From the IMG/VR virus record IMGVR_UViG_3300028045_000001, positions 175,961 to 239,960 of that record: a stretch of DNA of 64,000 bases; one strand, 5' to 3'. Both the position numbers and the translations under genes were made by a program. Below, one piece after another: positions 9,573 to 49,404 of the stretch (position 1 is its first letter; each line of letters starts with the position of its first letter). The notes beneath the pieces are model-generated. The model was given only the letters and a program-made list of their open reading frames with translations, was not told the DNA's origin and did not search any database.

Positions 9573-9605
9573 TGTATGTAATAAAAACATTTTCATCCCC
9601 TTTTT

Positions 9606-9618
9606 ATTTATATATTAC
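9606..9618 (+). promoter_or_regulatory. Candidate early promoter ATTTATATATTAC
   Basis: Identical 13-mer at 11101 and 49392; contains TATATTAC, the published phiKZ early promoter consensus. Confidence 0.6.
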
Positions 9619-11048: not shown

Positions 11049-11100
11049 AATAGATGGGGGCAAGTGCCAAGTTATTGATTAGCGCTTATTAGATCTTTTC

Positions 11101-11113
11101 ATTTATATATTAC
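11101..11113 (+). promoter_or_regulatory. Candidate early promoter ATTTATATATTAC
   Basis: Exact copy of the motif, about 50 nt upstream of the first zinc-finger gene. Confidence 0.6.
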
Positions 11114-11161
11114 TACTATGTGTAAGGTATATGTATGTAGTTTTTAATATAGGAGAATAAT

Positions 11162-11353
11162 ATGGAAATATGTCAAGTCGATGGATGTAATAGAAAACAC
11201 TATGTCAAGGGCCATTGTGAAAAACACAATAAAGAAATGCAGATATGCGGCAGGATACTCCCAGTTATAAAGTGTAAGTTCGAAGGATGCGATGAAGAGC
11301 GTTTTAAGGAGGGGTACTGTCATGGATGCTACATGCGGATGTATAAACCATGA
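11162..11353 (+). CDS. Zinc-finger repeat protein, 2 units
   Basis: CQVDGC...GHCEKH and CKFEGC...GYCHGC; RBS AGGAG. Confidence 0.75.
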   Translation: MEICQVDGCNRKHYVKGHCEKHNKEMQICGRILPVIKCKFEGCDEERFKEGYCHGCYMRMYKP

Positions 11354-11378
11354 CAGAATAACATCATAGGAGAATAAT

Positions 11379-12164
11379 ATGAAAATATGTAAGGTTGATG
11401 GATGTGATAGAAAACACCATGCTAAAGGTTACTGTCACAAACATTATCTACAAATACAAAAATATGGCAAGATCCTGCCAGATAGAGTTATAACTGTTGG
11501 ATGTAAAGTCGATAGATGCGATGAAAAGCACCATGCTAAAGGATACTGTAGGAAACACTATCTACAAGTGCAACAACATGGCAAGACCATGTCTGATAGA
11601 GTTAAGCCAGTTGGATGTAAAGTCGATAGATGTGATGGAAAACGCTATGCTAAAGGGTATTGTAGTAGACACTATCGACAAGTGCATAAGCGTGACAAGA
11701 TCCTGCCAGATAGAGTTAAGCCCGTTGGATGTAAAGTCGATAGATGTGACGGAAAACACTATGCTAAAGGGTATTGTAGCAAACATTATCGCCGGATGAG
11801 AAGACATGGTAAGATTCTGCCAGATAGAGTCAAACCCGTTGGATGTACAGTCGATAGATGTAATGAAGAGCGTGTAGCTAAGGGGTATTGTCACAAACAC
11901 TATCATCAGATGCAGAGGAAGGGCAAGCTCCTGCCAGATAGAGTTGTTGGATGTAAAGTTGATGGATGTAAGGGAAAACACTATGCTAAAGGCCACTGTA
12001 GGAAACATTATCTACAAATGCATAGGTACGGTAAGATCCTACCAGATAAAGTCAAACACGTTGGATGTAAATTCAAAGGATGTGATGAAAAATACAAAGC
12101 CAAGGGCTATTGTAATACACATTACAATCAAATATGGCGACTTGGCAAGATCATAGGAGAATGA
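11379..12164 (+). CDS. CCCH zinc-finger tandem-repeat protein, 7 units
   Basis: Seven units of about 38 aa, C-K-V-D-(G/R)-C-x5-AKG-(Y/H)-C-x2-H-Y-x6-GK; very basic; no catalytic domain. Confidence 0.85.
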   Translation: MKICKVDGCDRKHHAKGYCHKHYLQIQKYGKILPDRVITVGCKVDRCDEKHHAKGYCRKHYLQVQQHGKTMSDRVKPVGCKVDRCDGKRYAKGYCSRHYRQVHKRDKILPDRVKPVGCKVDRCDGKHYAKGYCSKHYRRMRRHGKILPDRVKPVGCTVDRCNEERVAKGYCHKHYHQMQRKGKLLPDRVVGCKVDGCKGKHYAKGHCRKHYLQMHRYGKILPDKVKHVGCKFKGCDEKYKAKGYCNTHYNQIWRLGKIIGE

Positions 12165-12165
12165 T

Positions 12166-12600
12166 ATGAAAATATGTAAAGTTAGCTGGTGTGATAGGGG
12201 GCGTGTAGCTAAGGGGTATTGCATTACACACTACCAACAAATGCGGAGGAAGGGGAAGCTCCTACCAGACGGACCCGCAGTATGTAAAGTCGATGGGTGC
12301 GATGGAAAGCACTATGCTAAAGGCTACTGTCAAAAACACTATCTACAAATGCATAAGCGTGGCAAGACCATGCCAGATAGAGTTGCTGAATGTCAAGTCG
12401 ATGGGTGTGATAGAAAACACCATGCTAAAGGGTATTGTAGTAGACACTATCGACAAGTGCAAAAACATGGCAAGACCATGTCTGATAGAGTTATAACTGT
12501 TGGATGTAAAGTTGATGGATGTAAGAGAAAATACTATGCTAAAGGCCACTGTAGTAAACACTATCTACAAATATGGAAGCATGGTGAGATCATAAAATAA
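12166..12600 (+). CDS. CCCH zinc-finger tandem-repeat protein, 4 units
   Basis: Four units of the same motif; its RBS overlaps the stop of the previous paralogue. Confidence 0.85.
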   Translation: MKICKVSWCDRGRVAKGYCITHYQQMRRKGKLLPDGPAVCKVDGCDGKHYAKGYCQKHYLQMHKRGKTMPDRVAECQVDGCDRKHHAKGYCSRHYRQVQKHGKTMSDRVITVGCKVDGCKRKYYAKGHCSKHYLQIWKHGEIIK

Positions 12601-12640
12601 AAGTGTGCACTTAATCACACGCGATAGGAGGTAGTTGGAC

Positions 12641-13120
12641 ATGCACGAATGCATAGGTTCGTCTGTAATCCATGCGATGATGGCAGATGATGACTCGTAT
12701 ATAGCGCAGGAATTGTACGACTATTGCGCCTATAGTTTCGACAGAGATATTTATTTAGAAAGTGTCAATGAAAACTTCGAGATTATTCCTGGACTATTAA
12801 GAACCACTATGCGATCTGATACAGCCACCAATATGTATGTACTGACGGTGCACACTCTATGTGGATATGTGCTCACTATCCATACATCCAATAATTCGGG
12901 GTTACTTGATGCTTCTGGTGGGATCCTACAATTTAAAGACGTGTATATAGGTAAACACATATTGACATATTCTGGTGGATATGTTGGACCCGGTAGAATC
13001 CTCGACATCAAATGGGCTTGTTGCGCCATACCTTACTATGTGGACCTATACATGGACTACGGGATAAACTACCCCATTATTGATGGGGCAATAGTGCCAC
13101 CGATTAAATCAATTCTATAA
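12641..13120 (+). CDS. Stand-alone Hint/intein-like domain protein, paralogue 1
   Basis: ECIGSSVI...MYVLTV...TSNNSGLL...IGKHILT...IIDGAIVP; ATG 12641 is well spaced from GGAGG. Confidence 0.55.
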   Translation: MHECIGSSVIHAMMADDDSYIAQELYDYCAYSFDRDIYLESVNENFEIIPGLLRTTMRSDTATNMYVLTVHTLCGYVLTIHTSNNSGLLDASGGILQFKDVYIGKHILTYSGGYVGPGRILDIKWACCAIPYYVDLYMDYGINYPIIDGAIVPPIKSIL

Positions 13121-13135
13121 GGGAGGACGAATAAC

Positions 13136-13657
13136 GTGACTCACTATGGTACAAAAGAGTCCAAAGTATATGGAACATTATTCGGCGAGAACGAGTACAC
13201 TCTTGAAGATCTATTCGAATACTACTACGTGAGTATGTATGAGACCGATGAGCTCCCATATGCATTCGAGGAACTCGATGTCCCGACGTACATAGACAGT
13301 GTTGACAACAGAGGCTATTTAGTGCCAGCAGCGCTGATGGATATGTACTATGTTGGCGATCACCACTTATGCTACAGGATAACTACACAAGCTAATAATT
13401 ACAATTGTAATATTATTTCAACTAAAACTTCCAGGGACAGTTATTTTGTAGGGGTAGGAGGAGAGCTATTGCACGTGAGCCAATTGCAACAAGGTACTTC
13501 GATATTGGTATGCCCATTCCCTCCAGATGGAAATTTGTCCATAGGAGTGATAAGCGATGTAACTATATTGCCTCCAGAAGAAATATATGGGATAGTATTA
13601 GAGGCCGATGTACAATACTACATCAAGGATGGGTTTGTAGTCCCATCGAACACATAA
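13136..13657 (+). CDS. Stand-alone Hint/intein-like domain protein, paralogue 2
   Basis: YGTKESKV...TLEDL...CYRIT...SRDSYFV...SQLQQGTSIL...ISDV...EEIYGIVL...IKDGFVVPSN follows the intein block A-B-F-G pattern. Confidence 0.65.
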   Translation: MTHYGTKESKVYGTLFGENEYTLEDLFEYYYVSMYETDELPYAFEELDVPTYIDSVDNRGYLVPAALMDMYYVGDHHLCYRITTQANNYNCNIISTKTSRDSYFVGVGGELLHVSQLQQGTSILVCPFPPDGNLSIGVISDVTILPPEEIYGIVLEADVQYYIKDGFVVPSNT

Positions 13658-13673
13658 TAGTTGGAGAATAAAT

Positions 13674-14156
13674 ATGCACTATTGTACCATATGCGCAGAA
13701 GCAACATATGAAAATAGATGGTTATACACCATGTTTGATATAATTGAGATGCTTAAGCAACCGGACAGCTTATTAGTAGATGGAATAAATGCGAACGGAG
13801 AAACTATACTGACACCAGTACTCGGACTTAGTCCTGCTAAAGAAGCATCGTGCTACACCGTGGTAGCCAGAGTAGTACGTGGACTCACATATTCAATGGC
13901 GACGCGCACTTCTTCGGATAGTTATTTTGTTAAACTAGGTGGCGAACTAGTGGCAGTGACCCAACTTAAAGAAGGAGCAACTATATTGATGCATCCATAC
14001 ATGAATGCTTTGACGCCAGGGGTGGTCTTGAGTATTAGCGTAGACCAGATAAGAACAATGTGGGCATTAGAAGTAGACTATAAAACACCATATTACATTA
14101 AAGATGGGTTCGTAGTACCATCAAACAATATATTACAATTGGCCAACATGAGGTGA
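13674..14156 (+). CDS. Stand-alone Hint/intein-like domain protein, paralogue 3
   Basis: CYTVV...SSDSYFVKLGG...TQLKEGATIL...VLSISV...YYIKDGFVVPSN. Confidence 0.62.
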   Translation: MHYCTICAEATYENRWLYTMFDIIEMLKQPDSLLVDGINANGETILTPVLGLSPAKEASCYTVVARVVRGLTYSMATRTSSDSYFVKLGGELVAVTQLKEGATILMHPYMNALTPGVVLSISVDQIRTMWALEVDYKTPYYIKDGFVVPSNNILQLANMR

Positions 14157-14160
14157 TTGA

Positions 14161-14685
14161 ATGTACTATTTATCTGAATGTGAATATTTTCTTCATAGGA
14201 GCAAACGATACGATCTGCCCGAACTAAGTAAACAGACCGAATGTGGCACCATGCCTTCAATACAATTGCTCTCTATTAATAACAATGGTGGATTCCAAAT
14301 AGCCAATATACTGAGTGTGAATCAACTCAGTTACATAGATATACGCTACTTCGTTGCGGTTAGATCGCCTATATGTGAACATGGTCGTAGGGTAGATGAC
14401 ATATTCGCATTGAATGCTGCGCCCAACACTACATTTATTAAATTGGGAGGAGAGCCAATAAGAGCATCTCAATTAAAGAAGGGCCTCGCTATACTAATGT
14501 GTTCTCCGGAATTACAAGTAATAGAGGGGTCTGCTGCTAATGTGGGATACGGTGTGGTGGAGTCTATAACTGAATTACGCGATAGTAACATTTATGGCGT
14601 GGAACTTGAAGCTGACGATATCGCATACAACATTAAGAATAATTTCATTATTGCCAATGCTATGGCCATACAGGCGCTTAACTAA
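14161..14685 (+). CDS. Stand-alone Hint/intein-like domain protein, paralogue 4
   Basis: APNTTFIKLGG...ASQLKKGLAIL...VESITEL...IYGVEL...NNFIIAN. Confidence 0.62.
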   Translation: MYYLSECEYFLHRSKRYDLPELSKQTECGTMPSIQLLSINNNGGFQIANILSVNQLSYIDIRYFVAVRSPICEHGRRVDDIFALNAAPNTTFIKLGGEPIRASQLKKGLAILMCSPELQVIEGSAANVGYGVVESITELRDSNIYGVELEADDIAYNIKNNFIIANAMAIQALN

Positions 14686-14700
14686 TTTGGGGATTTATAA

Positions 14701-15267
14701 ATGTATTACGGAACAGAAGATACTTATGTACATTACAATGGATTAGATGTCACTCTATCAGAACTACATGACCGCAATATGGTCAATGATAGTGGGGGAA
14801 GGCCTATGTCCATTTACGGCATAAGCAAGTACGGCAATCTAATGGCCGCTAATATAGTAGCGACACAGTACGTTGGCGAGCTAATGTGCCGTACGGTGAC
14901 TGCAGTACCTAACGGATATCTTGGTGAAACATGCAGAATAACTATCGCCCATTACAGTTACTTTGTTGGAATTGGGGGACAGTTAATAAAAAGTGCACAG
15001 TTACAAAAAGGCGCGACAGTTGCAGTGTTCCCAAACTACATGTACCTGCCACATGTCCCAAAGAACTTGTGTCGATTTATAACACCTGGAAGAATATCCC
15101 ACATAAGTAAAACATCCATTAAAAAGATATACTGCTTAGCACCATCGACATATATCCCAGTTTTAATTGATAGTGGATTCATCACTTCCCACGACCAATG
15201 GGAGTACTGCAGGGCCTTCCAACAATCACCAATCTACAAAAGAATACAACTTATTGGAAAGGATTAA
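14701..15267 (+). CDS. Stand-alone Hint/intein-like domain protein, paralogue 5
   Basis: YGTEDTYV...TLSEL...AHYSYFVGIGG...SAQLQKGATV...ISHI...KIYCL...DSGFITSH. Confidence 0.62.
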   Translation: MYYGTEDTYVHYNGLDVTLSELHDRNMVNDSGGRPMSIYGISKYGNLMAANIVATQYVGELMCRTVTAVPNGYLGETCRITIAHYSYFVGIGGQLIKSAQLQKGATVAVFPNYMYLPHVPKNLCRFITPGRISHISKTSIKKIYCLAPSTYIPVLIDSGFITSHDQWEYCRAFQQSPIYKRIQLIGKD

Positions 15268-15274
15268 TAAATAT

Positions 15275-15784
15275 ATGTATATGTGCACAAAGGAATCAGT
15301 CGTATATGCAATGGCCCGTGGGGATGGAGCTTACGTGGCATGTAATCTTTTTGACTCGCACAATTGGGACATCAATGAGGGCATATTTATTGAGAGTATA
15401 GACAATGAGTTTGCTCCGATGCCATCTCTGTTGTATGGGATAATAAAGACCGGCAATAAAAGCATATTTTGTGTTGAGATACTCACTGCATCAAAGGTTG
15501 ACATTACGATACACATGTCTATAGACTCATGTTTAATTGATCTCTGTGGAGGTATAATAAAACCTATAAATGTATCTATTGGTAAACATGTGCTAACATT
15601 TAAAGGCACCGTTATTGAACCGGGCGTAATAACTAACATCACGCGGTCCGAGGCAACGATGACATATTGTTTAGATCTGCACTTGGGTGAGGATACCGAA
15701 GAATATGTATGTTATCCGGTGATAGATGGTGTAGTGGTCCCAGCATTTAATCATAGGGATGCATCCAGCAGGGTAGACTTTTAG
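15275..15784 (+). CDS. Stand-alone Hint/intein-like domain protein, paralogue 6
   Basis: MCTKESVV...SIDSCLI...VSIGKHVLT...ITNI...TYCLDL...VIDGVVVP. Start reassigned to ATG 15275, which removes the overlap with paralogue 5. Confidence 0.58.
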   Translation: MYMCTKESVVYAMARGDGAYVACNLFDSHNWDINEGIFIESIDNEFAPMPSLLYGIIKTGNKSIFCVEILTASKVDITIHMSIDSCLIDLCGGIIKPINVSIGKHVLTFKGTVIEPGVITNITRSEATMTYCLDLHLGEDTEEYVCYPVIDGVVVPAFNHRDASSRVDF

Positions 15785-15823
15785 CACTCCGATACTGTCC
15801 ACTGATGGACAGTATCGGAGTGC
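15784..15823. terminator. Bidirectional terminator-like inverted repeat, 18-bp stem, 4-nt loop
   Basis: gcactccgatactgtcca-ctga-tggacagtatcggagtgc between convergent genes; a T-run follows at about 15830. Confidence 0.75.
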
Positions 15824-15839
15824 CGGATATTTTTTTTAT

Positions 15840-17534
15840 TTACTGCAATGCCTCTATCTCTGTCGGTAAGAATGGCCTCGTCAAAGCATATAAGTTTGCT
15901 TTTGTAAATCCATTATGTTCGAACCTAAGTTTCCTATCTGGCGTTATAACTCCATTCAGTGAGAATAAGAAATCTTCTATGTTTTTATTTGCCTCTGTGG
16001 TTAGTATAGCGGAGCCATTGAGTGCATCGCCATCATAGTCAGCGTCAAAAGTACTTAAGGTTCCAGGATGAACGATCATCGAATCTACATATCCGTTACC
16101 GATTATTGGGTAATGGGGAAGTGTTATGAATACATCTGGATCGAACATAGTCGTTAGCCTAACCAATCTATCTGGCTTCGTGGTCGCAACTCTTATCCTT
16201 GGAGTTATAGTGTTATCGTCATTAGTTACTGGGTATCTGGTACATAGGCCATGTTTTCCTTTTGTGGCATGAAATGCAACTATGTAGAACATCTCGATGT
16301 AAGTTAACGGTCGTATATAGCTCTTATCTATATCGCCTTCACGATATGTCGATAACTCATTTATATCCCTAAAGATTATAACTTGCTCACCATCATCATA
16401 GACATTATAAATGTTCCATGTCTTACCATCAAGATCTTCCAGAGTAACGTTACTTGCTCTAAACGAGGCATCCTCAAATCTTTTAATGGTAGTACTAATT
16501 CCGTCAGAAGATACAAATCGATCTCGCATTTTTGGGGATATTTCAGTATAATGTAAGGACAGGCTCTTTGGGTCAATTACAGGTATCTGAGTAGAGGTTT
16601 CTTGCACCACCTGATTAAAGAACATTCTTTTAAGATAGTATATAGCTATCGGTTGAGTTACATTTATTGATTGTAGTGTCCCCATAATACACTCGTGGGA
16701 TTTCAACATCCTAGGATCAGTCGGAGAGTCTCCCGCTATTGTTGCAGCACTGATCACATTTCTTGCGCCATGTACTATACTTCGTTTTTGAAATTTGTCT
16801 TGAGCCCAACCATGTTTGTCGCTCATGAAATTCGTATAGTAATCAAAGATCTCATTAGCCTTTCTTTGGATAGCGTATCTAACAGTATCATATACTGGAT
16901 TTACTTTATAACTACCAGACGGCAAAGCCTGTGATAAGGCTATCAATGACATATATAGTTTGTTGGCATCGTCGTAGTTATCGATGTCGCCCATATTAAT
17001 ATCTCTGATGCCGGCCATCATAATTAGATATTTGTCGATATGCATACTTTCTATATGGTTATCTATCAGCTTTACTTTATAGCTCCGCTGTAAAGATTTG
17101 CTCGCTTTAAATTTTATTTTTTGTACATACTCCATAAAGAAACTATATCCTGTGCGAGCACGCTCGTCCTCTCTATCGATTTTAATTAAATCGCCAACTT
17201 CTTCATCAAAGTATGCAAAAGTATTACTCGACATTATTTCTCCGTATAATTTTTTTAGGGAGAGGAGGGTCTTGTATATTTTTGGATGAAATATCTTTGT
17301 CCTAAGGTTTATGTAGCCAAAATTTAACATCCTTTCAGGAGAACCTATTTCCCCAAAAATAGTTTGACTGAATAATCCATTTGGATCTAATTCATTGCTG
17401 GAGGGGACACGTATAAATTGTGAGGTAACTTCCCCAATATTGTTTTCTTTTATGTATTTGTCTACATCAAGTAAAGCTATTTTATACGGTTCTTTAGTGT
17501 CAGTGATTGTTGGCTCTTCTATTTGTATACTCAT
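15840..17534 (-). CDS. rpoC: RNA polymerase beta' subunit, N-terminal catalytic part (probably virion RNAP, phiKZ gp180-like)
   Basis: PNGLFSQTIFG...FGYINL N-terminal motif, RYP motif and catalytic HPGTLSTFDADYDGD (NADFDGD variant). Confidence 0.9.
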   Translation of the reverse strand: MSIQIEEPTITDTKEPYKIALLDVDKYIKENNIGEVTSQFIRVPSSNELDPNGLFSQTIFGEIGSPERMLNFGYINLRTKIFHPKIYKTLLSLKKLYGEIMSSNTFAYFDEEVGDLIKIDREDERARTGYSFFMEYVQKIKFKASKSLQRSYKVKLIDNHIESMHIDKYLIMMAGIRDINMGDIDNYDDANKLYMSLIALSQALPSGSYKVNPVYDTVRYAIQRKANEIFDYYTNFMSDKHGWAQDKFQKRSIVHGARNVISAATIAGDSPTDPRMLKSHECIMGTLQSINVTQPIAIYYLKRMFFNQVVQETSTQIPVIDPKSLSLHYTEISPKMRDRFVSSDGISTTIKRFEDASFRASNVTLEDLDGKTWNIYNVYDDGEQVIIFRDINELSTYREGDIDKSYIRPLTYIEMFYIVAFHATKGKHGLCTRYPVTNDDNTITPRIRVATTKPDRLVRLTTMFDPDVFITLPHYPIIGNGYVDSMIVHPGTLSTFDADYDGDALNGSAILTTEANKNIEDFLFSLNGVITPDRKLRFEHNGFTKANLYALTRPFLPTEIEALQ

Positions 17535-18434: not shown

Positions 18435-18445
18435 GGAGTTTGATT

Positions 18446-21400
18446 ATGTCTGATGAAATATTTGGGGACGACACCTCGGGCGATGACGTCATGTTTGATT
18501 TCGAGGACGATCTTACTGACGACCGTAAAGCGGTCAGCTTACCAAAGGCCATTACAAAAACAGCGTTTCAGGGTTTAACAAAAGGATCCACCGCTGGAAT
18601 ACGTGCCGGTATATCGAATGTTCTTCCAGAAGTAGGTGCCGTTGCTGCAGATTTTATCAGTGAAAAAGACAATGCATTACAGACCATAACTGACGTTCAA
18701 GACGAAGGTTCAGAAGCCTTCTTGTCGATTAAAAAAACTACTGAGAAACTCCTGCCGAGAGCTAAGAGCTTTATACCTAAGCGGATATACGATGTGATGA
18801 GTGACTTCGCTACATCTTATGAGCCTGAAGTCGATTCCGCAGCAGAGGTAACGGAAGAAGATCAGCGGGAACTTGATATAGCTGATCGATTGGCTACTAT
18901 CTTTTCCATAAAAGCCGAACAAGAAAGAGATTTAGCAGTAACCGAAAATCTGGAAACTAATATAAGCAGACAGTTAGACTTAAACATGCATAGTTCTAGG
19001 ATGAGTGTCGCCAAACAAACAGCATTCTCACTTAGAAATATAGCGGACTTTTCGTACAACCAAACAATGGCATACATGAAAGAATCTTTGTATGCTAAAT
19101 GGCGACATATTTATATCTCCAAAGATATTCTTAGCTCTATCAAAATACTTACTGGAATGAGTGAGAAGAATCTAAGAATTATATCTAAGAATACTGGATT
19201 GCCCGATATACAAAAGAAACGGTTATTAGAGTCACTTAAAGAAACTTCTGTTGGTGGCCTATCCTCCTCAATAAGTGGAAAAGTAAGTGGGTATGCCGGT
19301 AGAGTGTTGTCTAAATTAAAAGATGATGCACTGTCCCCAGGCATAGAACTTATGGGCGGGATAGCCGATGCAGGCGACGCTACAAATGAGCTACTTGAAA
19401 TGCAGGACTCCATGAGGGACATGGGCGACGACGACGGTGGGCTGGCTGGAATGGCAGCTGGAGCTGGAGCCGGTGGGATCGGATCGTTGTTGGGTAGATC
19501 ATTTATAAGTAAGAAATTGCAAGAAATTTTTGATACAAGATCTCTAAATGAAACTGTAGGTAACATAAAAACCAAGGGGATATTGGGGTTAGGGGATATT
19601 GCAGAACGAGGTGGGCTAATTGGAACGCTGGCTGCAAGCTTACCTGGATTGTCTGAGGAAAGTAACATACTCAAAGCCAAAGAAGAGGTGGACGACGGCG
19701 GTGTTCGTCTTGCTACAGTGGAGGTTATCCCTGGACTGCTAAGTAGAATACTGCAAGAAATAAATGCGCTAAGAATTGGAGAGGTTAGTGAGTTACAAGT
19801 TTATGATCCAAAGGCATCGGAATTTGTAGATGCAAGTGAACGTAAGCAACGTATGGTCACTCAGATATTCGGTGATAGAGACATACGGGCAGAACGAGCA
19901 GCAGATGCGATCGGTACTCTGAAAGCAGCGTTCCTTCAATCAAAAGACGACGATATCGATATAGAGGAATTCGATGATCTTAGTTTAGATATGGCCAGAG
20001 TAGCAAATAATATGGCCCATAGTGAGACCCTACTTAAGCCAAAGAAATTAATTGAGTACAATGAAGACCCATCAAATGTTAGTTTCTATATGAGTAAACT
20101 TATAGATGGGGTAGAGAATCCAGAAGAAGTTGTTAATACTATCCTACAATCTGTGACCGATGGGACAGGGGATATCTTAAAATCGACCGTAGGCATATTC
20201 AATAATAAAATTATTAATATGATGAATCGAGCTTCGCATCTTGATCTAATACAGAAGATGTGGGACAGTGAGTCCGGCGAGGTAATGAAAGACTTGCGGG
20301 ATACGTCCGGTAAGATAAGTCAAAAATTTATATCAGAAAGTTTTTCCGATATTGATAAAGAGACCTTCGCCAAACAAACAACCAATCGGGTTGAATTGCT
20401 GTCTAAAGAAATAGAAGGTTCAGTTGCTAACAAGAATAAAGTAAAACATAGCGTACGATCCACTGCCCTTAAAGGGGCCGAATTGGTAATGTCAGACGAT
20501 AGGTTTGAGAGTTTCTTTCTTGAACATATTAGAAACAGTGAGTTTAAAAAAGAAGCTGCCGATATAATCGATGCCGTTAATTCCGATCCAGACATACTTG
20601 GAAGAGATAGATTTAAAGTAATACGGGATCGCATAGAGCAAGTAATCGACGCCAAGTATCCATCTTCTCCTGGCATAAAAGAAAGTCTCGGGAGAGCGTT
20701 GGATGGATTGAAGTTGGCACCGACCTACATTAAGGGGGCCGTCAAGCGAGTGATCTCTCCTTCTTATGCTAAAATGATAAGTGGCATAAGTGAAGAAGTC
20801 TTGCAGACTTCAGTTAGAGACATAGTCAATTCCGTATTACTTGACCAGACTATTCCAGTTAAGGATCAGATCAACGCGATACGTTCCAGAGTTACTGAAT
20901 TGTTAAGTCAGGATATATATCGAGAAGATCGTCCAAGACTCACAAGAGAGTTCGATGTAGCTTTACGAAAAATACGTCTTTCTTCTTATGACGACGAGGG
21001 CCAGTTGAAGGAGCACTCTCGTAATATATTTGATAAATCCGACCCTATCAACGTTGTTCTTGATAGGACCCAACGTGAGAACGAAGCAAAATTAAACGAA
21101 GAGTACGATAATGTACTGTCCGGTATGTCTGTAGTAGTGGAGGAATCCATTGCTGCTATAAATGAAAAACTTAACACCGCCGCTGATGGGATCAAAGATA
21201 GGGTAGCTCAAGCAGATGACAAGTATGGAGTTAGCGAACGAGTACATTCCATTAAAGATGTTGTACGCAATAGAGTTGACCAACTTAAGGACAATGTAAA
21301 AGATAGCAGTGAGGCAGTCGACGAGTCCATTACAAATGCAGCTTCTGAGAATGAACTTGCTCCCGAAGCAGATTCATTTGCAGCTGTGGATAAATTGTTG

Positions 21401-24400
21401 GAAGATTCAAGAAATATAAACGAGCAGATTGCAGAACTCAAAGATAAGTTAGGTATAGATAAGCTCATTCCGGCCGTCGGTTCCACCATCAAGGAACTGC
21501 GGGGCATATTGCATGTTACAACGGAAGACCTCGAAGTGTCCGACGATGATAAAGTCGTCGATGCGATGGAGATAGTCCAACCGACTTCAATAGAACTTCC
21601 GCAAAGACTAACAGACTTTTTAACAACAGTCGCGAAAAAAACTGAGGACATAAAAGAGAACGTAATTCAGCCGGCACAGGAGCAGGCACGGACTCGAGTT
21701 CAGAGTATGAAAGACTTCTTATCCACTACAGTTAGTGTAGAGGACACTGGAAATGAGATAGCTGGATTTGTTCGTGAGATTGCAGAGACTGTCGCTGAAC
21801 ATGGAGAGCCCGATCTAACTCAAGGAGAAGAAACAGAAACAGCCGTAGATCACCTCAGTAGTGTAAAGGATACAAATGAGAAAATAGTTAGCATCCTATC
21901 CGAAAGTAGTGATAGTCGGGGCGGTAGAGAGCTTCTTGATAGTGTTCTTCAAATACAGAAGAACGTTATGACGTTGTCCTCCAAAGAACATACTCTTGAG
22001 TGGAAGGATGCGCTAAAGGAAGTTCATTATAGTTCAGAGAATCCAATTGTATCTGGCCTAAATGAAATTGTACATAGATTGAATACCCTGAATGAAACCT
22101 TTACAGGTAGTGAACAACTCACATCGCAAGATGGAGATGGTACTTCTCCTAAATCTAAGAAACGTGGGGTATTTGGTATCATGCAGGATGGGTTTAACTC
22201 TGTTGGATCCATTGCGGCGGCAGGGGCTAAAGGATATGCCTCTCTATATGGCAACTTAATTAAATCAAGTGGATCTGCTGCTGGATCGATACTCGAAGGT
22301 GGTGGGAACCTACTCGGCAAAGCAGGTGAATTAGCCGGCAAAGCATTACCTGGCGCATTCAATATGTACAAAGATGTTCTAACAGGAACCATCGGTGCCA
22401 CTACAACAGGTGCATCTAAAATACTTGGCTCAGTTTTTGGAAGAGGAGGGAAAGTCGAGCCATTTGTAAATGTATACCTTAAGGATAGTATAGACCCAGG
22501 CAATCCGCTGTTATCAAAGAGGCTGCAGAAAAAAGGAGTCTTCTTTGAGGATGGGAGTGAACTAGAAGCATCAGATGAAATAACGGAACCTATCTTTAAT
22601 ACCGATGGAGAAGTTCTTGTAACTGAGGAAGATATCGATACTGGACTTGTGGACGTAGATAATAACCCATTAGGAACAAAATCAGTATTTGATAAAGTTA
22701 CAACGAAGGGCGGAGGAACAATCGGCAAACTCTTTGGTGGGCTAAAAGACATCGGAGGCTTACTCGCCGGAAAAGCGTTACCCGCGTATTACAAAGGTAT
22801 ATTTGGATTGGGATCATCCTTGGTTAAGGGCGGAACCGATATGGTCTCTGGACTGTTCGGTGTCCGGTCCAATAAAAAGGATCTCGAGACCATCGTAGGA
22901 ACTAGGCTGGACGCGATCTTAGATATAATAGACACACGTACAGAGACCATTATAGAGTCCATGAAAAAGGATGAAACAAAATCTATATTCGGTGATACAG
23001 ATGGCGATGGCGACGTAGAGGGCTCGTACAAGGATAGACTTGGAAAAACTAAATCGAAGTCTAAGACTTCATCAGAAGTAAGGAACGCTATTGCCCGCAA
23101 AACAAACATAACCCAGAAAAAACCTGGCATTGCGGCTAAGGCTGGTATATTGAGTTCGATAGCTGGTGGTGCTGGATACTTAGCGAGGAGTGCTGGTCGT
23201 AAGTTGGGACTCAGTGATAAACAAAGCGAAGTTGCTGGGTTAGCCGGTGGTGGGACAGCGATGGGCGTAGCCGGACTTGGTGCAACTGGGGTCGGACGCA
23301 AGGCGATGACTACCGTTGGTAGACAATTAGGGAAGACTGCTCTTTCAATCGGAGGGCGAGTACTCGCTACTGGTGCTGCAACTGGCATGGGAAGTGCAGC
23401 TATGGGTGGACTGGCTACAGCTGGCGGGGCATTGGCAACAGGTGCCGCTTCTATAGCTGCTTCTCCAGTGTTGTTGGCTGGTCTTGCTGCTGCTGGCGTT
23501 GGGGCTGTCGGGTATGGTCTCTATAAGCATTTAACTAAGGACAAAAGTATTAAAGAAGGCAATGATCTTGCACGACTCATGGTCGATCAAGGATTCATGC
23601 ATGATGGAATAGGTTGGGCAGATTGGGATCTTACAGAAGAAGGCGAAGAAGCGATCCAAATGAGCTTCGATAAAAAAGAATTAGAAATTCTAATGAAATC
23701 GGATAAGATTTCTGATGAAGCTAAGGAATATATACAAGCTCGTTTGGATAATTGGGAAGCTATCATACGTCTAAGAAAAAAAAGTGACCCTAACCGTAAG
23801 ATCAGTAGTAAGGTAGATGATATTACAAAGGCCAGTGATGAAAAGATTAAAGACCGTGAGGAGAGTGGCGAATTTAAAGGGAAGATAAAAGCAGCATTAA
23901 AGGAAAGTGCTATATTCGCTTTGGGTCCCACTGCAGTAGCGGCAGCTGGAATATATAAATATTTTTCTAGAGGAGACGAAGTAAAAAACGCTAACGAATT
24001 TGCGAGGAAGATGGTGGATTCTGGACTTCTTCATGATGGCTGGGGCTGGGCAGATTGGAGTTTAACGGAAGATGGCAAAGAAGCCGTGTCGACAACATTC
24101 ACAATTGAAGAGCTTAAGCTACTCATTGACTCCGATCAAATTGATGATGATGCTAAGGAATTTATACAGGCGCAGCTTGATAAATTGGAGTTAAAATCAG
24201 CCAAGAGATTAGATCCGAAGAAGATCAAACTATCTAATTTAAACAAAACATATGTGAACGAATCAGGGGCAATTGATCCGTTTAAAGTTCCAGTGAATAA
24301 GGATATCATTGGTGCGGATCGAGTTCCTAACTCTTTATCTTTTAATGATCCAAGTAATACGTCTGTATACGGCCAAGCCACTGTTGCGGCGAATGATGCA

Positions 24401-24700
24401 ACTATAAAAGAACAACCAATTGTAGTTAACACTAACACCGACAATACTGAACTTATAAATGCAATAAGGGAACAAACCTCGGTGATGTCCGGCAAACTTG
24501 GCAACATAGCAGACAATACTTTAGAAGCGGCCAATAAAGAGATCAAGGTCGATGTTCTTGTACCGGCCGATAACGGATCAAAGAATCCAGTACCCCCACA
24601 GGTGGGGATACATGAGATAGATAAGACTACTTCTAAAGTAGTTAGAACACAAACTCTCTCTACCATGAAGGAGGCGGCCACGCCTCCATTGTTCAGCTAA
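18446..24700 (+). CDS. Large tail-associated/tape-measure-like protein (phiKZ gp181-like)
   Basis: About 2084 aa, helical, with Gly/Ala-rich hydrophobic stretches and a DTDGDGD motif; sits next to the vRNAP beta' gene and a lysozyme gene, as gp181 does. Confidence 0.7.
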   Translation: MSDEIFGDDTSGDDVMFDFEDDLTDDRKAVSLPKAITKTAFQGLTKGSTAGIRAGISNVLPEVGAVAADFISEKDNALQTITDVQDEGSEAFLSIKKTTEKLLPRAKSFIPKRIYDVMSDFATSYEPEVDSAAEVTEEDQRELDIADRLATIFSIKAEQERDLAVTENLETNISRQLDLNMHSSRMSVAKQTAFSLRNIADFSYNQTMAYMKESLYAKWRHIYISKDILSSIKILTGMSEKNLRIISKNTGLPDIQKKRLLESLKETSVGGLSSSISGKVSGYAGRVLSKLKDDALSPGIELMGGIADAGDATNELLEMQDSMRDMGDDDGGLAGMAAGAGAGGIGSLLGRSFISKKLQEIFDTRSLNETVGNIKTKGILGLGDIAERGGLIGTLAASLPGLSEESNILKAKEEVDDGGVRLATVEVIPGLLSRILQEINALRIGEVSELQVYDPKASEFVDASERKQRMVTQIFGDRDIRAERAADAIGTLKAAFLQSKDDDIDIEEFDDLSLDMARVANNMAHSETLLKPKKLIEYNEDPSNVSFYMSKLIDGVENPEEVVNTILQSVTDGTGDILKSTVGIFNNKIINMMNRASHLDLIQKMWDSESGEVMKDLRDTSGKISQKFISESFSDIDKETFAKQTTNRVELLSKEIEGSVANKNKVKHSVRSTALKGAELVMSDDRFESFFLEHIRNSEFKKEAADIIDAVNSDPDILGRDRFKVIRDRIEQVIDAKYPSSPGIKESLGRALDGLKLAPTYIKGAVKRVISPSYAKMISGISEEVLQTSVRDIVNSVLLDQTIPVKDQINAIRSRVTELLSQDIYREDRPRLTREFDVALRKIRLSSYDDEGQLKEHSRNIFDKSDPINVVLDRTQRENEAKLNEEYDNVLSGMSVVVEESIAAINEKLNTAADGIKDRVAQADDKYGVSERVHSIKDVVRNRVDQLKDNVKDSSEAVDESITNAASENELAPEADSFAAVDKLLEDSRNINEQIAELKDKLGIDKLIPAVGSTIKELRGILHVTTEDLEVSDDDKVVDAMEIVQPTSIELPQRLTDFLTTVAKKTEDIKENVIQPAQEQARTRVQSMKDFLSTTVSVEDTGNEIAGFVREIAETVAEHGEPDLTQGEETETAVDHLSSVKDTNEKIVSILSESSDSRGGRELLDSVLQIQKNVMTLSSKEHTLEWKDALKEVHYSSENPIVSGLNEIVHRLNTLNETFTGSEQLTSQDGDGTSPKSKKRGVFGIMQDGFNSVGSIAAAGAKGYASLYGNLIKSSGSAAGSILEGGGNLLGKAGELAGKALPGAFNMYKDVLTGTIGATTTGASKILGSVFGRGGKVEPFVNVYLKDSIDPGNPLLSKRLQKKGVFFEDGSELEASDEITEPIFNTDGEVLVTEEDIDTGLVDVDNNPLGTKSVFDKVTTKGGGTIGKLFGGLKDIGGLLAGKALPAYYKGIFGLGSSLVKGGTDMVSGLFGVRSNKKDLETIVGTRLDAILDIIDTRTETIIESMKKDETKSIFGDTDGDGDVEGSYKDRLGKTKSKSKTSSEVRNAIARKTNITQKKPGIAAKAGILSSIAGGAGYLARSAGRKLGLSDKQSEVAGLAGGGTAMGVAGLGATGVGRKAMTTVGRQLGKTALSIGGRVLATGAATGMGSAAMGGLATAGGALATGAASIAASPVLLAGLAAAGVGAVGYGLYKHLTKDKSIKEGNDLARLMVDQGFMHDGIGWADWDLTEEGEEAIQMSFDKKELEILMKSDKISDEAKEYIQARLDNWEAIIRLRKKSDPNRKISSKVDDITKASDEKIKDREESGEFKGKIKAALKESAIFALGPTAVAAAGIYKYFSRGDEVKNANEFARKMVDSGLLHDGWGWADWSLTEDGKEAVSTTFTIEELKLLIDSDQIDDDAKEFIQAQLDKLELKSAKRLDPKKIKLSNLNKTYVNESGAIDPFKVPVNKDIIGADRVPNSLSFNDPSNTSVYGQATVAANDATIKEQPIVVNTNTDNTELINAIREQTSVMSGKLGNIADNTLEAANKEIKVDVLVPADNGSKNPVPPQVGIHEIDKTTSKVVRTQTLSTMKEAATPPLFS

Positions 24701-49348: not shown

Positions 49349-49391
49349 CACCGATGCAGTAGCCGTAAAGTCACATACTCACCACATTTTT

Positions 49392-49404
49392 ATTTATATA
49401 TTAC
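49392..49404 (+). promoter_or_regulatory. Candidate early promoter ATTTATATATTAC
   Basis: Exact copy of the motif, at the switch from structural to accessory genes. Confidence 0.6.

What the first reader, a model, noticed from the sequence alone, without database searches (positions are those of the whole stretch)
11162..12600. Three genes made entirely of 13 CCCH zinc-finger units with a variable putative recognition helix
Seen in sequence: the genes have 2, 7 and 4 units of about 36-38 aa (C-x4-C-x9-C-x2-H-Y...GK) and no other domain. The scaffold is conserved, while residues around the His vary (HKHYLQ, RKHYLQ, SRHYRQ, SKHYRR, HKHYHQ, NTHYNQ, ITHYQQ). Established knowledge: a single such finger is common at the N-terminus of phage HNH endonucleases as a DNA-binding module. 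Inference: a nuclease-free, repeat-coded nucleic-acid-binding array, conceptually like C2H2 or TALE arrays, that could recognise long DNA or RNA targets for host shut-off, genome protection or anti-defence.
Basis: partly seen in the sequence, partly recalled or inferred. Interest (0 to 1): 0.8.

Follow-up and report, generated by a model that had tools for sequence, protein, structure and literature searches.

The report
Nuclease-free zinc-finger arrays, jumbo phage
Three adjacent genes of a marine jumbo phage encode proteins made only of 13 repeated zinc-finger units; these units normally guide phage homing nucleases to DNA, so the proteins are probably DNA binders that do not cut, and they belong to a large family that nobody has studied.

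Summary
Three + strand genes (63, 261 and 144 aa) consist only of 2, 7 and 4 units with the spacing C-x4-C-x9-C-x2-H (one unit ends in Cys). Each gene has its own ribosome-binding site, and the three lie in three different frames. These 13 units are the only ones in the 64 kb window.

The unit matches Pfam DUF5763 and resembles Zf_WRKY19. AlphaFold models each unit confidently as a short hairpin plus a 10-residue helix. The order of the zinc ligands suggests a treble-clef finger, not a C2H2 finger.

Tandem arrays of 2-10 units, not single fingers, are the norm in front of HNH, HNH_3, Endonuclease VII and GIY-YIG nucleases. Nuclease-free arrays are also common, for example Bacillus phage 0305phi8-36 gp9/gp10, a 15-unit Bacillus cereus protein and 35-unit oomycete proteins. 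The family has about 26,000 clusters at 50% identity.

The window's genes look functional. All 52 ligand positions are kept, scaffold dN/dS is 0.16 and net charge is +44 and +22. A variable helix stripe (positions 17/21/24) lies beside a conserved basic stripe (18/22/25).

The most likely function is zinc-dependent DNA binding without cleavage, probably expressed early. A modular recognition code is untested. This is a new member of a known but uncharacterised kind.

The parts
11096..11113 (+). Promoter-like motif TTTTCATTTATATATTAC, 48 nt upstream of the first finger gene
   Evidence: The 18-nt motif occurs exactly, or with the Y position varying, only three times in the window, at 9601, 11096 and 49387. 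All three sites are intergenic and on the + strand. With up to 3 mismatches allowed there are 5 matches, against 0.9 expected by chance. The motif contains TATATTAC, listed as the phiKZ promoter motif and also present in the 201phi2-1 consensus in PMC7058600 Table 2. Function is inferred, not shown.
11151..11155 (+). Shine-Dalgarno AGGAG of gene A; the same cassette recurs at 11368-11372 (gene B) and 12155-12159 (gene C)
   Evidence: Read directly from the sequence. The cassette AGGAGAAT(A/G)ATATG(A/G)AAATATGT precedes and starts all three genes.
11162..11353 (+). Gene A: 63 aa, 2 units (the second is a CCCC variant and is truncated after the helix)
   Evidence: phrog_1271 E = 4.5e-7.
11379..12164 (+). 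Gene B: 261 aa, 7 units, pI 9.8, net charge +44
   Evidence: Pfam DUF5763 scores 35.3 bits, above the cutoff of 26.3. phrog_5351 E = 1e-73, matching only profile positions 6-79 of 171.
12166..12600 (+). Gene C: 144 aa, 4 units, pI 9.7, net charge +22. Its start lies just after the stop of gene B, and its ribosome-binding site lies inside the end of gene B.
   Evidence: The AlphaFold2 model has mean pLDDT 88.7, with helices at residues 20-29, 56-65, 92-101 and 130-139.
12635..15784 (+). Neighbours, probably in the same transcription unit: six tandem paralogous genes for stand-alone Hint (mini-intein) fold proteins (12635-13120, 13136-13657, 13674-14156, 14161-14685, 14701-15267, about 15275-15784)
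   Evidence: Alignment A3. Paralogy at 25-38% identity. ESM Atlas structure matches with TM 0.66-0.75 to Hint, intein and PT-HINT families. AlphaFold2 pTM 0.74, and Foldseek against PDB gives E = 4e-6 to inteins. There is no Pfam or PHROG hit.
15784..15823 (+). Terminator-like hairpin with an 18-bp stem that closes the + strand gene block. It faces the end of the convergent RNA polymerase beta-subunit gene (15840-17534, - strand).
   Evidence: No comparable terminator was found between 11162 and 15784 on the + strand.

Best explanation
The three genes encode free-standing, strongly basic poly-zinc-finger proteins. They are built only from the DUF5763-type CCCH module, which elsewhere forms the N-terminal targeting region of phage and bacterial homing nucleases. 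Each unit probably binds one Zn through Cys1, Cys6, Cys16 and His19. The first two ligands sit on a short hairpin (zinc knuckle) and the last two at the start of a 10-residue helix, which is a treble-clef-like layout. One face of that helix packs inward (His19, hydrophobic 23, His/Tyr26). A second face is conserved and basic (18/22/25) and is proposed to hold the DNA backbone. A third, adjacent face is variable and polar (17/21/24) and is proposed to read bases. Units are joined by a conserved linker (GK-I/T-L/M-P-D-R-V-x-x-V-G), so 7 or 4 units in a row would cover a long composite site on double-stranded DNA. With no nuclease domain, binding would block or regulate rather than cut. The most likely role is as early-expressed regulators or roadblocks at specific sites on phage or host DNA. 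Shown here: gene structure, repeat architecture, family membership, purifying selection, predicted fold and domain partners. Inferred: zinc binding, DNA rather than RNA as the ligand, the roles of the helix faces, early expression and the biological role.
For: Architecture. Family: DUF5763 passes Pfam's cutoff for gene B, and PHROG families annotated as HNH endonuclease match only through their N-terminal parts. Domain partners in homologues all act on DNA: HNH_3, HNH/HNH_5, Endonuclease_7, AP2, HTH_7 and Sigma70_r4, and GIY-YIG at a borderline score. A Pseudanabaena phage Pan2 protein has 3 units plus HNH_3. The genes appear to be maintained rather than decaying. All 52 ligand positions are kept. 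dN/dS among units is 0.3 overall and 0.16-0.17 on the scaffold, at a synonymous divergence of 0.43-0.55. Each gene has its own ribosome-binding site. Charge is pI 9.7-9.8, against a median of 5.2 for the window's long + strand ORFs. Fold: pLDDT is 88.7, with one helix per unit at unit positions 17-26; pTM of 0.43 fits a beads-on-a-string chain. Variability: positions 17, 21, 24 and 26 are the most variable in the window. Across 425 units of the family, 17 and 21 are among the most variable and are rich in S/K/R/N/H/Q, while 18, 22 and 25 are mostly K/R/Q. Several nuclease-free paralogues per genome recur elsewhere: locus L037 has three, L038 has two and phage 0305phi8-36 has two. A possible early promoter motif lies upstream. 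There is experimental precedent for similar-looking N-terminal Zn modules. Deleting the one in N.phiGamma relaxed its specificity, and extra Zn motifs in N.BthT13001I added a base to its site (PMC3592412).
Against: There is no experimental datum for any DUF5763 member: no paper uses the name and no solved structure is related by sequence or fold. Homology to the tested N.phiGamma Zn domain could not be shown (hhalign probability 1.2%). The variable positions were picked after looking at the data, and their dN/dS of 0.75-1.0 fits relaxed constraint as well as target-driven diversification. The model coordinates could not be inspected, so the ligand geometry and helix faces rest on the secondary-structure output and helical periodicity. 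No RNA run was listed, so expression is not shown. The promoter motif is borrowed from phiKZ-like phages whose RNA polymerase is only about 30% identical to this phage's. No close relative was found, so unit numbers could not be compared.
Confidence: 0.6

Rival explanations
1. The proteins are targeting subunits that work in trans with a separately encoded nuclease (a split homing or nicking endonuclease). The arrays would bring a nuclease-only protein to specific sites.
For: Xu and Gupta describe stand-alone Zn-domain proteins next to phage HNH endonucleases. They propose that these act as 'mini-specificity subunits' or regulators of the nuclease gene (PMC3592412). The closest homologues of the window's units sit in proteins with long C-terminal tails: P0001 at 53% identity with an unassigned 189-aa tail, and P0002 at 42% with HNH_3.
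Against: tblastn with 194 C-terminal tails of homologues finds no nuclease-like partner anywhere in the 64 kb window. The neighbours are Hint-fold proteins and unknowns, not nucleases. The remaining 176 kb of the genome could not be examined.
Confidence: 0.15
2. The genes are decaying remnants of homing endonuclease genes that lost their nuclease domain and no longer have a function.
For: The module is typical of selfish homing genes. The block lies in an accessory region that is absent near the RNA polymerase gene of the nearest relatives. An array-only homologue sits between housekeeping genes of a bacterium, as free-standing homing genes do. Stand-alone Hint domains, the other typical part of such elements, lie next door.
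Against: There are no frameshifts or internal stops. All 52 Zn-ligand positions are intact. Scaffold dN/dS is 0.16 although synonymous sites are about half saturated. All three genes keep their ribosome-binding sites. Nuclease-free arrays recur as several paralogues per genome in unrelated phages and reach 14-15 units in bacterial elements.
Confidence: 0.1
3. The arrays bind RNA or single-stranded nucleic acid, for example phage or host transcripts, rather than double-stranded DNA.
For: The proteins are very basic. Zinc modules of several kinds bind RNA; a Zn ribbon of Nob1 binds rRNA, as cited in PMC3592412. TFIIIA-type arrays bind both DNA and RNA and are among the weak fold matches. phiKZ-like phages separate transcription from translation and need RNA-handling proteins.
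Against: The spacing differs from the RNA-binding C-x8-C-x5-C-x3-H fingers, and Pfam zf_CCCH_4 scores only E = 3.2. Every identified partner domain in the family acts on or binds DNA.
Confidence: 0.1
4. The proteins are protein-interaction scaffolds or a zinc store or sponge and have no nucleic-acid role.
For: There are 13 predicted metal sites in about 470 residues. Small treble-clef modules often mediate protein contacts (general knowledge).
Against: The strong net positive charge, the conserved basic helix stripe and the exclusive association with nucleases and DNA-binding domains point to nucleic acid.
Confidence: 0.05

Closest known systems
Pfam DUF5763 (PF19067) and the overlapping Zf_WRKY19 (PF24906) modules
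   Same: They share the same C-x4-C-x9-C-x2-H-Y core. Gene B passes the DUF5763 cutoff. Homologues and array-only relatives hit one or both models.
   Different: Both are domain models with no known function. Genes A and C fall below the cutoffs although they are clear paralogues of B.
Bacillus phage 0305phi8-36 gp9 and gp10 ('Cys-rich domain protein; may contain zinc fingers')
   Same: They are adjacent paralogous genes in a large phage with 4 and 3 units of the same module and no nuclease domain by Pfam. They are among the top three structural matches in BFVD, at E = 7e-9 and 2e-8 (matched to gp9 and gp10 by their lengths of 182 and 244 aa).
   Different: They have fewer units. gp10 has an unrelated N-terminal part of about 115 aa. 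Identity is only about 27%. RefSeq now labels gp9 'HNH endonuclease' although it has no HNH domain.
N-terminal DNA-targeting regions of free-standing HNH_3, HNH, Endonuclease VII and GIY-YIG homing nucleases (functionally like the NUMOD modules of Sitbon and Pietrokovski 2003)
   Same: They use the same module in tandem, 2-10 copies, with the same spacing and linker style.
   Different: Those proteins carry a catalytic domain of 100-200 aa after the array. The window's proteins end with the last unit.
Zinc 'ribbon' domains and stand-alone ZR proteins of phage HNH nicking endonucleases (Xu and Gupta 2013, PMC3592412)
   Same: N.phiGamma has an N-terminal C-x4-C-x8-C-x2-H module. Deleting it relaxed specificity, and extra motifs extended the site by one base. 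Nuclease-free Zn proteins were noted next to such nucleases.
   Different: Homology was not demonstrable (hhalign probability 1.2%). Those proteins have one or two sites, lie beside the terminase and cos site, and accompany an HNH gene. None of this holds here.
Eukaryotic C2H2 poly-zinc-finger proteins and TALE repeat arrays
   Same: These are a functional analogy only. They have tandem small units with conserved linkers and a few variable positions on a helix, and they read long DNA sites. The weak best PDB fold matches are WT1, TFIIIA, REF6 and CTCF arrays.
   Different: The ligand pattern and topology differ: the last two ligands lie at the start of the helix, not its end. There is no significant fold or sequence match (E >= 0.16). 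TALE repeats bind no metal.
Plant EFFECTOR OF TRANSCRIPTION / HRT repeats (zinc- and DNA-binding Cys-His repeats joined to a GIY-YIG nuclease domain)
   Same: They have a variable number of Cys/His zinc- and DNA-binding repeats combined with a homing-nuclease-type domain (PMC6585611). One relative here (P0121) has 10 units plus a GIY-YIG domain at a borderline score.
   Different: The first spacing is recalled from memory as C-x8/9-C, not C-x4-C. No profile comparison could be run, so this is a lead only.

Membership tests
Pfam DUF5763 (PF19067) | Whole-protein score at or above the curated cutoff of 26.3 bits | tested here: met
   Gene B scores 35.3 bits with 5 matched stretches. Gene C scores 17.1 bits, below the cutoff, and gene A has no hit. 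Both are evident paralogues of B, with 60-85% nucleotide identity between units.
Pfam DUF5763 (PF19067) | Ligand spacing C-x4-C-x9-C-x2-H followed by an aromatic residue | tested here: met
   13 of 13 units have this spacing, one with Cys in place of His. The same spacing holds in 434 of about 460 units from 120 homologues.
HNH / His-Me finger homing endonuclease (the label that PHROG-based annotation would give) | Presence of an HNH, HNH_3 or other beta-beta-alpha-metal catalytic domain | tested here: not met
   There is no HNH family hit in Pfam at E <= 10. The PHROG matches cover only the N-terminal part of the profiles. Every residue after the first three belongs to a unit. tblastn with 194 nuclease-bearing tails finds nothing in the window.
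C2H2 zinc finger arrays | C-x2-4-C-x12-H-x3-5-H pattern with both His in the C-terminal half of the helix, and a match to zf-C2H2 models or structures | tested here: not met
   No zf-C2H2 hit in Pfam. The PDB sequence search gives only TFIIIA at E = 0.22. Foldseek's best match has E = 0.16 and TM 0.15-0.2. Here the third and fourth ligands lie at the helix start.
Tristetraprolin-type CCCH RNA-binding fingers | C-x7-8-C-x5-C-x3-H spacing and a match to zf-CCCH models | tested here: not met
   The spacing is C-x4-C-x9-C-x2-H. zf_CCCH_4 scores E = 3.2 and 8.4 bits against a cutoff of 29.
Phage HNHE zinc-ribbon domain and adjacent ZR proteins (Xu and Gupta 2013) | Homology to the N-terminal Zn domain of N.phiGamma-type nickases | tested here: inconclusive
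   The layout is similar (C-x4-C-x8-C-x2-H), but hhalign of the unit profile against the N.phiGamma N-terminus gives a probability of 1.2% over 10 columns.
Phage HNHE zinc-ribbon domain and adjacent ZR proteins (Xu and Gupta 2013) | Location next to an HNH endonuclease gene and the terminase/cos region | tested here: not met
   The neighbours are unknown small proteins, Hint-fold paralogues, virion proteins and RNA polymerase subunits. No HNH tail homologue is present in the window.
Zinc-binding protein (any zinc finger) | Stoichiometric Zn bound by the four ligands of each unit | not testable with these tools
   This is inferred from the invariant ligands and the confident model. It needs metal analysis of purified protein.
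Sequence-specific DNA-binding array with a per-unit code (TALE-like or C2H2-like in function) | Each unit contacts a fixed number of bases, and its variable residues determine which bases | not testable with these tools
   Only indirect evidence exists: a variable polar stripe at 17/21/24 beside a basic stripe at 18/22/25 on the predicted helix, and 13 different 17/21/24 triplets in 13 units.

The most novel reading that the evidence does not exclude
The DUF5763 unit is a true modular reader. Each unit would contact a fixed short step of double-stranded DNA, with helix positions 17, 21 and 24 specifying the bases. Arrays of 2 to 35 units would then spell out long addresses, giving a third natural programmable DNA-binding scaffold beside C2H2 and TALE arrays, and a compact, prokaryotic and viral one. 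In this phage the three nuclease-free arrays would be early proteins that occupy chosen sites, for example to shield the phage's own sequences from the homing nucleases of competing phages or to silence host loci.
Probability: 0.15. Interest if true: 0.85.

Novelty: new member of a known kind. Interest (0 to 1): 0.45.

Why it matters
The module is very widespread. It occurs in about 26,000 clusters at 50% identity, in phages, bacteria, giant viruses and oomycetes. Even so, no paper using its Pfam name was found, and no solved structure was found by sequence or by fold. If the units read DNA one after another, they would explain how many free-standing homing nucleases find their long targets. 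They could also offer a small zinc-based scaffold for designed DNA binders.

For phage biology, recurrent nuclease-free arrays suggest that phages have repeatedly turned the targeting part of a selfish nuclease into a non-cutting DNA binder. Here they sit beside six nuclease-free Hint domains, in a likely early gene block of a phiKZ-like jumbo phage.

There is also a practical point. Annotation pipelines will label such genes 'HNH endonuclease', as RefSeq now does for 0305phi8-36 gp9, although they contain no nuclease.

Tried and rejected
- Megablast of the region against 50,697 phage records found no match.
- The PDB sequence search gave only a chance-level TFIIIA hit.
- Foldseek of the 4-unit model against PDB found nothing significant. 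The short local matches to the Sulfolobus topoisomerase III Zn finger (rmsd 1.2-2.9 over 26-28 residues, probability <= 0.38) are only a lead.
- The literature search for 'DUF5763' found no papers. The searches gave only the analogies cited in this report.
- NCBIfam has no model for these proteins. PADLOC gave one negligible hit.
- hhalign of the unit profile against the N.phiGamma Zn domain was not significant.
- I searched for close relatives to compare unit number. IMG/VR and the metagenome scan gave only the source contig itself and relatives at 30-41% RNA polymerase identity. Those relatives have no arrays near that gene.
- Reads and contigs: only Logan contigs were available. They break inside the repeat, so they cannot show copy-number variants.
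- No RNA run was listed.
- No partner nuclease was found in the window by tblastn with 194 tails.
- The Hint paralogues do not co-occur with arrays in the other fetched loci.
- Sigma-70-like promoters are not enriched in the region: 18 found against 24.6 expected.
- The idea that the three genes are one gene read through stops is rejected, because they lie in three different frames and each has its own ribosome-binding site.
- Positive selection on the variable positions is not supported (dN/dS 0.75-1.0, with positions chosen after the fact).
Full report
**What is there**

The + strand carries three adjacent ORFs: 11162-11353 (63 aa), 11379-12164 (261 aa) and 12166-12600 (144 aa). After a three-residue start (MEI or MKI), each protein consists only of units with the spacing C-x4-C-x9-C-x2-H. 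There are 2, 7 and 4 units, 13 in all. Internal units are 36 or 38 aa, and the last unit of each gene is shorter.

The second unit of the first gene has Cys in place of His.

A six-frame scan finds these 13 units and no others in the 64 kb. It also shows that the three genes lie in three different frames, so they cannot be one gene interrupted by stops. Each gene is preceded by the same AGGAG cassette and begins with nearly the same codons. The genes therefore arose by duplication of whole genes as well as of units.

At the DNA level, Tandem Repeats Finder reports a period of 114 nt, 10.8 copies and 69% matches. Units are 50-85% identical to one another. The units of the third gene are a mosaic of types seen in the second gene, not a block copy.

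Logan contigs from two seawater runs match the stretch with no differences at depths of about 78 and 6, though one or both may be the source sample. The same runs hold other unit-bearing contigs at lower depth and 80-85% likeness.

**Where it is**

The window is the last 64 kb of a 239,960-bp viral contig from a seawater metagenome. The phage encodes multisubunit RNA polymerase beta-type subunits like phiKZ-type jumbo phages, but is only about 30% identical to them. No near match exists among deposited phage genomes.

The finger genes lie in a block of small accessory genes between a virion protein gene and a convergent RNA polymerase subunit gene.

An 18-nt motif, TTTTYATTTATATATTAC, lies 48 nt upstream of the first gene. 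It occurs exactly at only two other places in the window, both intergenic and on the + strand. It contains TATATTAC, which one paper lists as the promoter motif of phiKZ and which is also in the 201phi2-1 consensus (PMC7058600).

The next strong terminator-like hairpin on the + strand is at 15784-15823. The finger genes may therefore be transcribed together with the six genes that follow them. Early expression is an inference. No RNA run was listed.

**What the unit is**

Gene B passes Pfam's cutoff for DUF5763, at 35.3 bits against 26.3. PHROG families annotated as HNH endonuclease match at E = 1e-73 to 3e-52, but only through the N-terminal part of their profiles. No nuclease family is hit, and NCBIfam has no model.

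AlphaFold2 was run on gene C with a 70-row alignment of in-register four-unit segments. It gives mean pLDDT 88.7 and pTM 0.43. Each unit has short strands followed by one 10-residue helix at unit positions 17-26, that is, starting right after the third Cys. Two ligands on a knuckle and two at the start of a helix is the treble-clef layout, not the C2H2 one. This is my reading, because the coordinates could not be inspected.

No solved structure is related by sequence or significantly by fold. The best PDB matches are C2H2 arrays at E >= 0.16.

Among predicted viral structures, three of the top five matches are named nucleases of actinophages (two HNH endonucleases and an Endonuclease VII). The other two have the lengths of 0305phi8-36 gp9 and gp10 (E = 7e-9 and 2e-8). 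Many short uncharacterised phage and giant-virus proteins follow further down the list.

**How common it is**

A word-indexed search found 354 homologues in the size range allowed. An exhaustive profile search of 1.84 billion cluster representatives found 25,990 at E <= 1e-3 and 12,442 at E <= 1e-10.

In the listed homologues the module nearly always comes in tandem, with 2-10 copies. About half of the first 120 carry a nuclease or DNA-binding domain after the array:
- HNH_3: 37
- HNH or HNH_5: 17
- Endonuclease_7: 3
- AP2, HTH_7 or Sigma70_r4 in a few others

One protein has 10 units and a GIY-YIG domain at a borderline score.

Nuclease-free arrays are also frequent, at 21 of 120 and 18 of 145 by a strict geometric rule. 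Of the 100 nearest ESM Atlas clusters, 82 carry no common Pfam family; the two shown are 'hypothetical protein' clusters of 66 and 209 aa.

Examples of nuclease-free arrays:
- Phage 0305phi8-36 gp9 and gp10, adjacent paralogues annotated as 'may contain zinc fingers', with no HNH domain by Pfam.
- A phage contig with three such genes and another with two.
- A 4-unit gene on a 195-kb viral contig.
- An 8-unit protein between pheST and a tRNA synthetase gene in a bacterial genome.
- A 14-unit protein in an element with TubZ and an integrase.
- A 15-unit Bacillus cereus hypothetical protein.
- Proteins of 24 and 35 units in Aphanomyces oomycetes.

None has a name beyond 'hypothetical protein'.

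**Are the window's genes functional?**

All 52 ligand positions are kept. Nei-Gojobori counts over all unit pairs give:
- dN/dS 0.3 overall
- dN/dS 0.16-0.17 on the scaffold
- dN/dS 0.09-0.10 for helix positions 18, 19, 20, 22, 23 and 25
- synonymous divergence 0.43-0.55

The repeats are therefore old and have been held by purifying selection. The pairs are not independent, so these are descriptive figures.

The proteins are very basic. Gene B has pI 9.8 and net charge +44, and gene C has pI 9.7 and +22, against a median pI of 5.2 for the window's long + strand ORFs.

**The 'recognition helix'**

Within the window the most variable core positions are 17, 21, 24 and 26, followed by 8, 10 and 11. 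Across 425 units of the family, 17 and 21 are among the most variable and are dominated by S, K, R, N, H and Q. Positions 18, 22 and 25 are mostly K, R or Q. Position 19 is the His ligand, and 23 is hydrophobic.

On a helix spanning positions 17-26 this gives three stripes:
- 19/23/26 face the core.
- 18/22/25 form a conserved basic stripe.
- 17/21/24 form an adjacent variable polar stripe.

That is what one expects of a helix lying in a DNA groove, with one edge on the backbone and one reading bases. All 13 units have different 17/21/24 triplets.

dN/dS at these positions is 0.75-1.0, and the positions were chosen after looking.

**Experimental precedent**

The only bench data I found concern similar-looking N-terminal Zn modules of phage HNH nickases (PMC3592412):
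- Deleting the 51-aa Zn domain of N.phiGamma weakened activity and relaxed specificity.
- The extra Zn motifs of N.BthT13001I added a C to the site and kept doing so when fused to another catalytic domain.
- Stand-alone Zn proteins next to such nucleases were noted, and the authors proposed them as regulators or 'mini-specificity subunits', but did not test them.

N.phiGamma begins with C-x4-C-x8-C-x2-H. A profile comparison with the window's unit was not significant, so this is an analogy and not shown kinship.

**Best explanation and rivals**

I judge the genes to encode zinc-dependent, non-cutting, sequence-selective DNA-binding proteins derived from the targeting part of homing nucleases. 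They are probably made early and act as regulators or roadblocks on phage or host DNA (confidence 0.6 for the binding mechanism, less for the role).

The rivals are:
- Targeting subunits for a nuclease encoded elsewhere (0.15). No partner was found in the window, and the rest of the genome was not seen.
- Decaying homing-gene remnants (0.1). The selection data and the recurrence of paralogue sets in other phages argue against this.
- RNA or single-strand binders (0.1).
- Protein scaffolds or zinc stores (0.05).

**Novelty**

This is a new member of a known but functionally uncharacterised kind. The specific case is not exceptional in unit number or in lacking a nuclease. The family as a whole is under-studied and would be of real interest if a per-unit recognition rule exists.

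**Seen in passing**

The six genes after the finger genes (12635-15784) are paralogues with no Pfam or PHROG hit. They have a confident mini-intein (Hint) fold:
- ESM Atlas TM 0.66-0.75
- AlphaFold2 pTM 0.74
- Foldseek E = 4e-6 and TM up to 0.75 to the NpuDnaB, NrdJ-1 and Ssp DnaB inteins

They stand alone, without a host protein to splice. The block-B His and the penultimate His are replaced, so splicing seems unlikely.

This one likely transcription unit thus joins orphaned targeting modules of homing nucleases with orphaned intein-type domains. I have no explanation for that.

Noticed in passing
window 12635-15784 (+): Six tandem paralogous genes (about 160-190 aa, 25-38% identical) lie directly after the finger genes. 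They have no Pfam or PHROG hit but a confident stand-alone Hint (mini-intein) fold. A Cys is kept at position 4 (MHYCT). The block-B His and the penultimate His are replaced, and the C-terminal Asn is kept in some copies (..GFVVPSN). They are probably not splicing-competent, and their function is unknown.
   Followed up: yes
window 9601-9618, 11096-11113, 49387-49404 (+): An 18-nt motif, TTTTYATTTATATATTAC, is found exactly three times, always intergenic and upstream of + strand genes. It contains the TATATTAC motif reported for phiKZ promoters. These are candidate phage promoters that mark three transcription units of small unknown genes.
   Followed up: partly
window 15784-15823: A perfect 18-bp stem with a 4-nt loop lies between the last Hint paralogue (+ strand) and the convergent RNA polymerase beta-subunit gene (15840-17534, - strand). 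It is a likely bidirectional terminator.
   Followed up: no
window 11388-12597, unit codons 28-38: The linker-coding DNA between fingers has about half the synonymous divergence of the finger cores (0.245 against 0.476 among the nine closest units). This hints at gene conversion or unit shuffling at the linkers, or at a constraint at the nucleotide level.
   Followed up: partly
window about 12589-12605: After the stop of gene C, the sequence ATCATAAAATAAAAGTG resembles a decayed copy of the cassette ATCATAGGAGAAT(A/G)ATATG that joins genes A/B and B/C. A further gene copy may once have followed.
   Followed up: no
window 14701-15267 and 15167-15784: The mechanical ORF 15167-15784 (TTG start) overlaps the previous paralogue by 100 nt. 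Alignment with its paralogues suggests the real start is the ATG at about 15275 (MYMCT).
   Followed up: partly
L001 4274-4822 (Bacillus phage 0305phi8-36 gp9, NC_009760.1): RefSeq calls gp9 'HNH endonuclease', while the GenBank record calls it 'Cys-rich domain protein'. It has four finger units and no HNH domain by Pfam. This is an example of a nuclease name carried over through the shared finger module.
   Followed up: yes
L042 8001-12188 (Aphanomyces stellatus, P0133) and P0184 (Aphanomyces cochlioides): Oomycete genomes encode single-exon hypothetical proteins made almost wholly of 35 and 24 units with the same spacing, among ordinary eukaryotic genes. The module is shared between phages, bacteria and eukaryotes.
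   Followed up: partly
window 11387-11620 and 12346-12439, runs X1 and X2: The same seawater runs hold short lower-depth contigs that are 80-85% like single units and continue into other finger-like sequence. Other array genes, probably from other phages, are present in the community.
   Followed up: no
window 18440-24700, 27399-31496, 34979-40072 (+): Very long ORFs (2086, 1365 and 1697 aa) follow in the window. The 1365-aa ORF has homologues next to the RNA polymerase gene in both distant relatives (L004, L040). They were not examined further.
   Followed up: no
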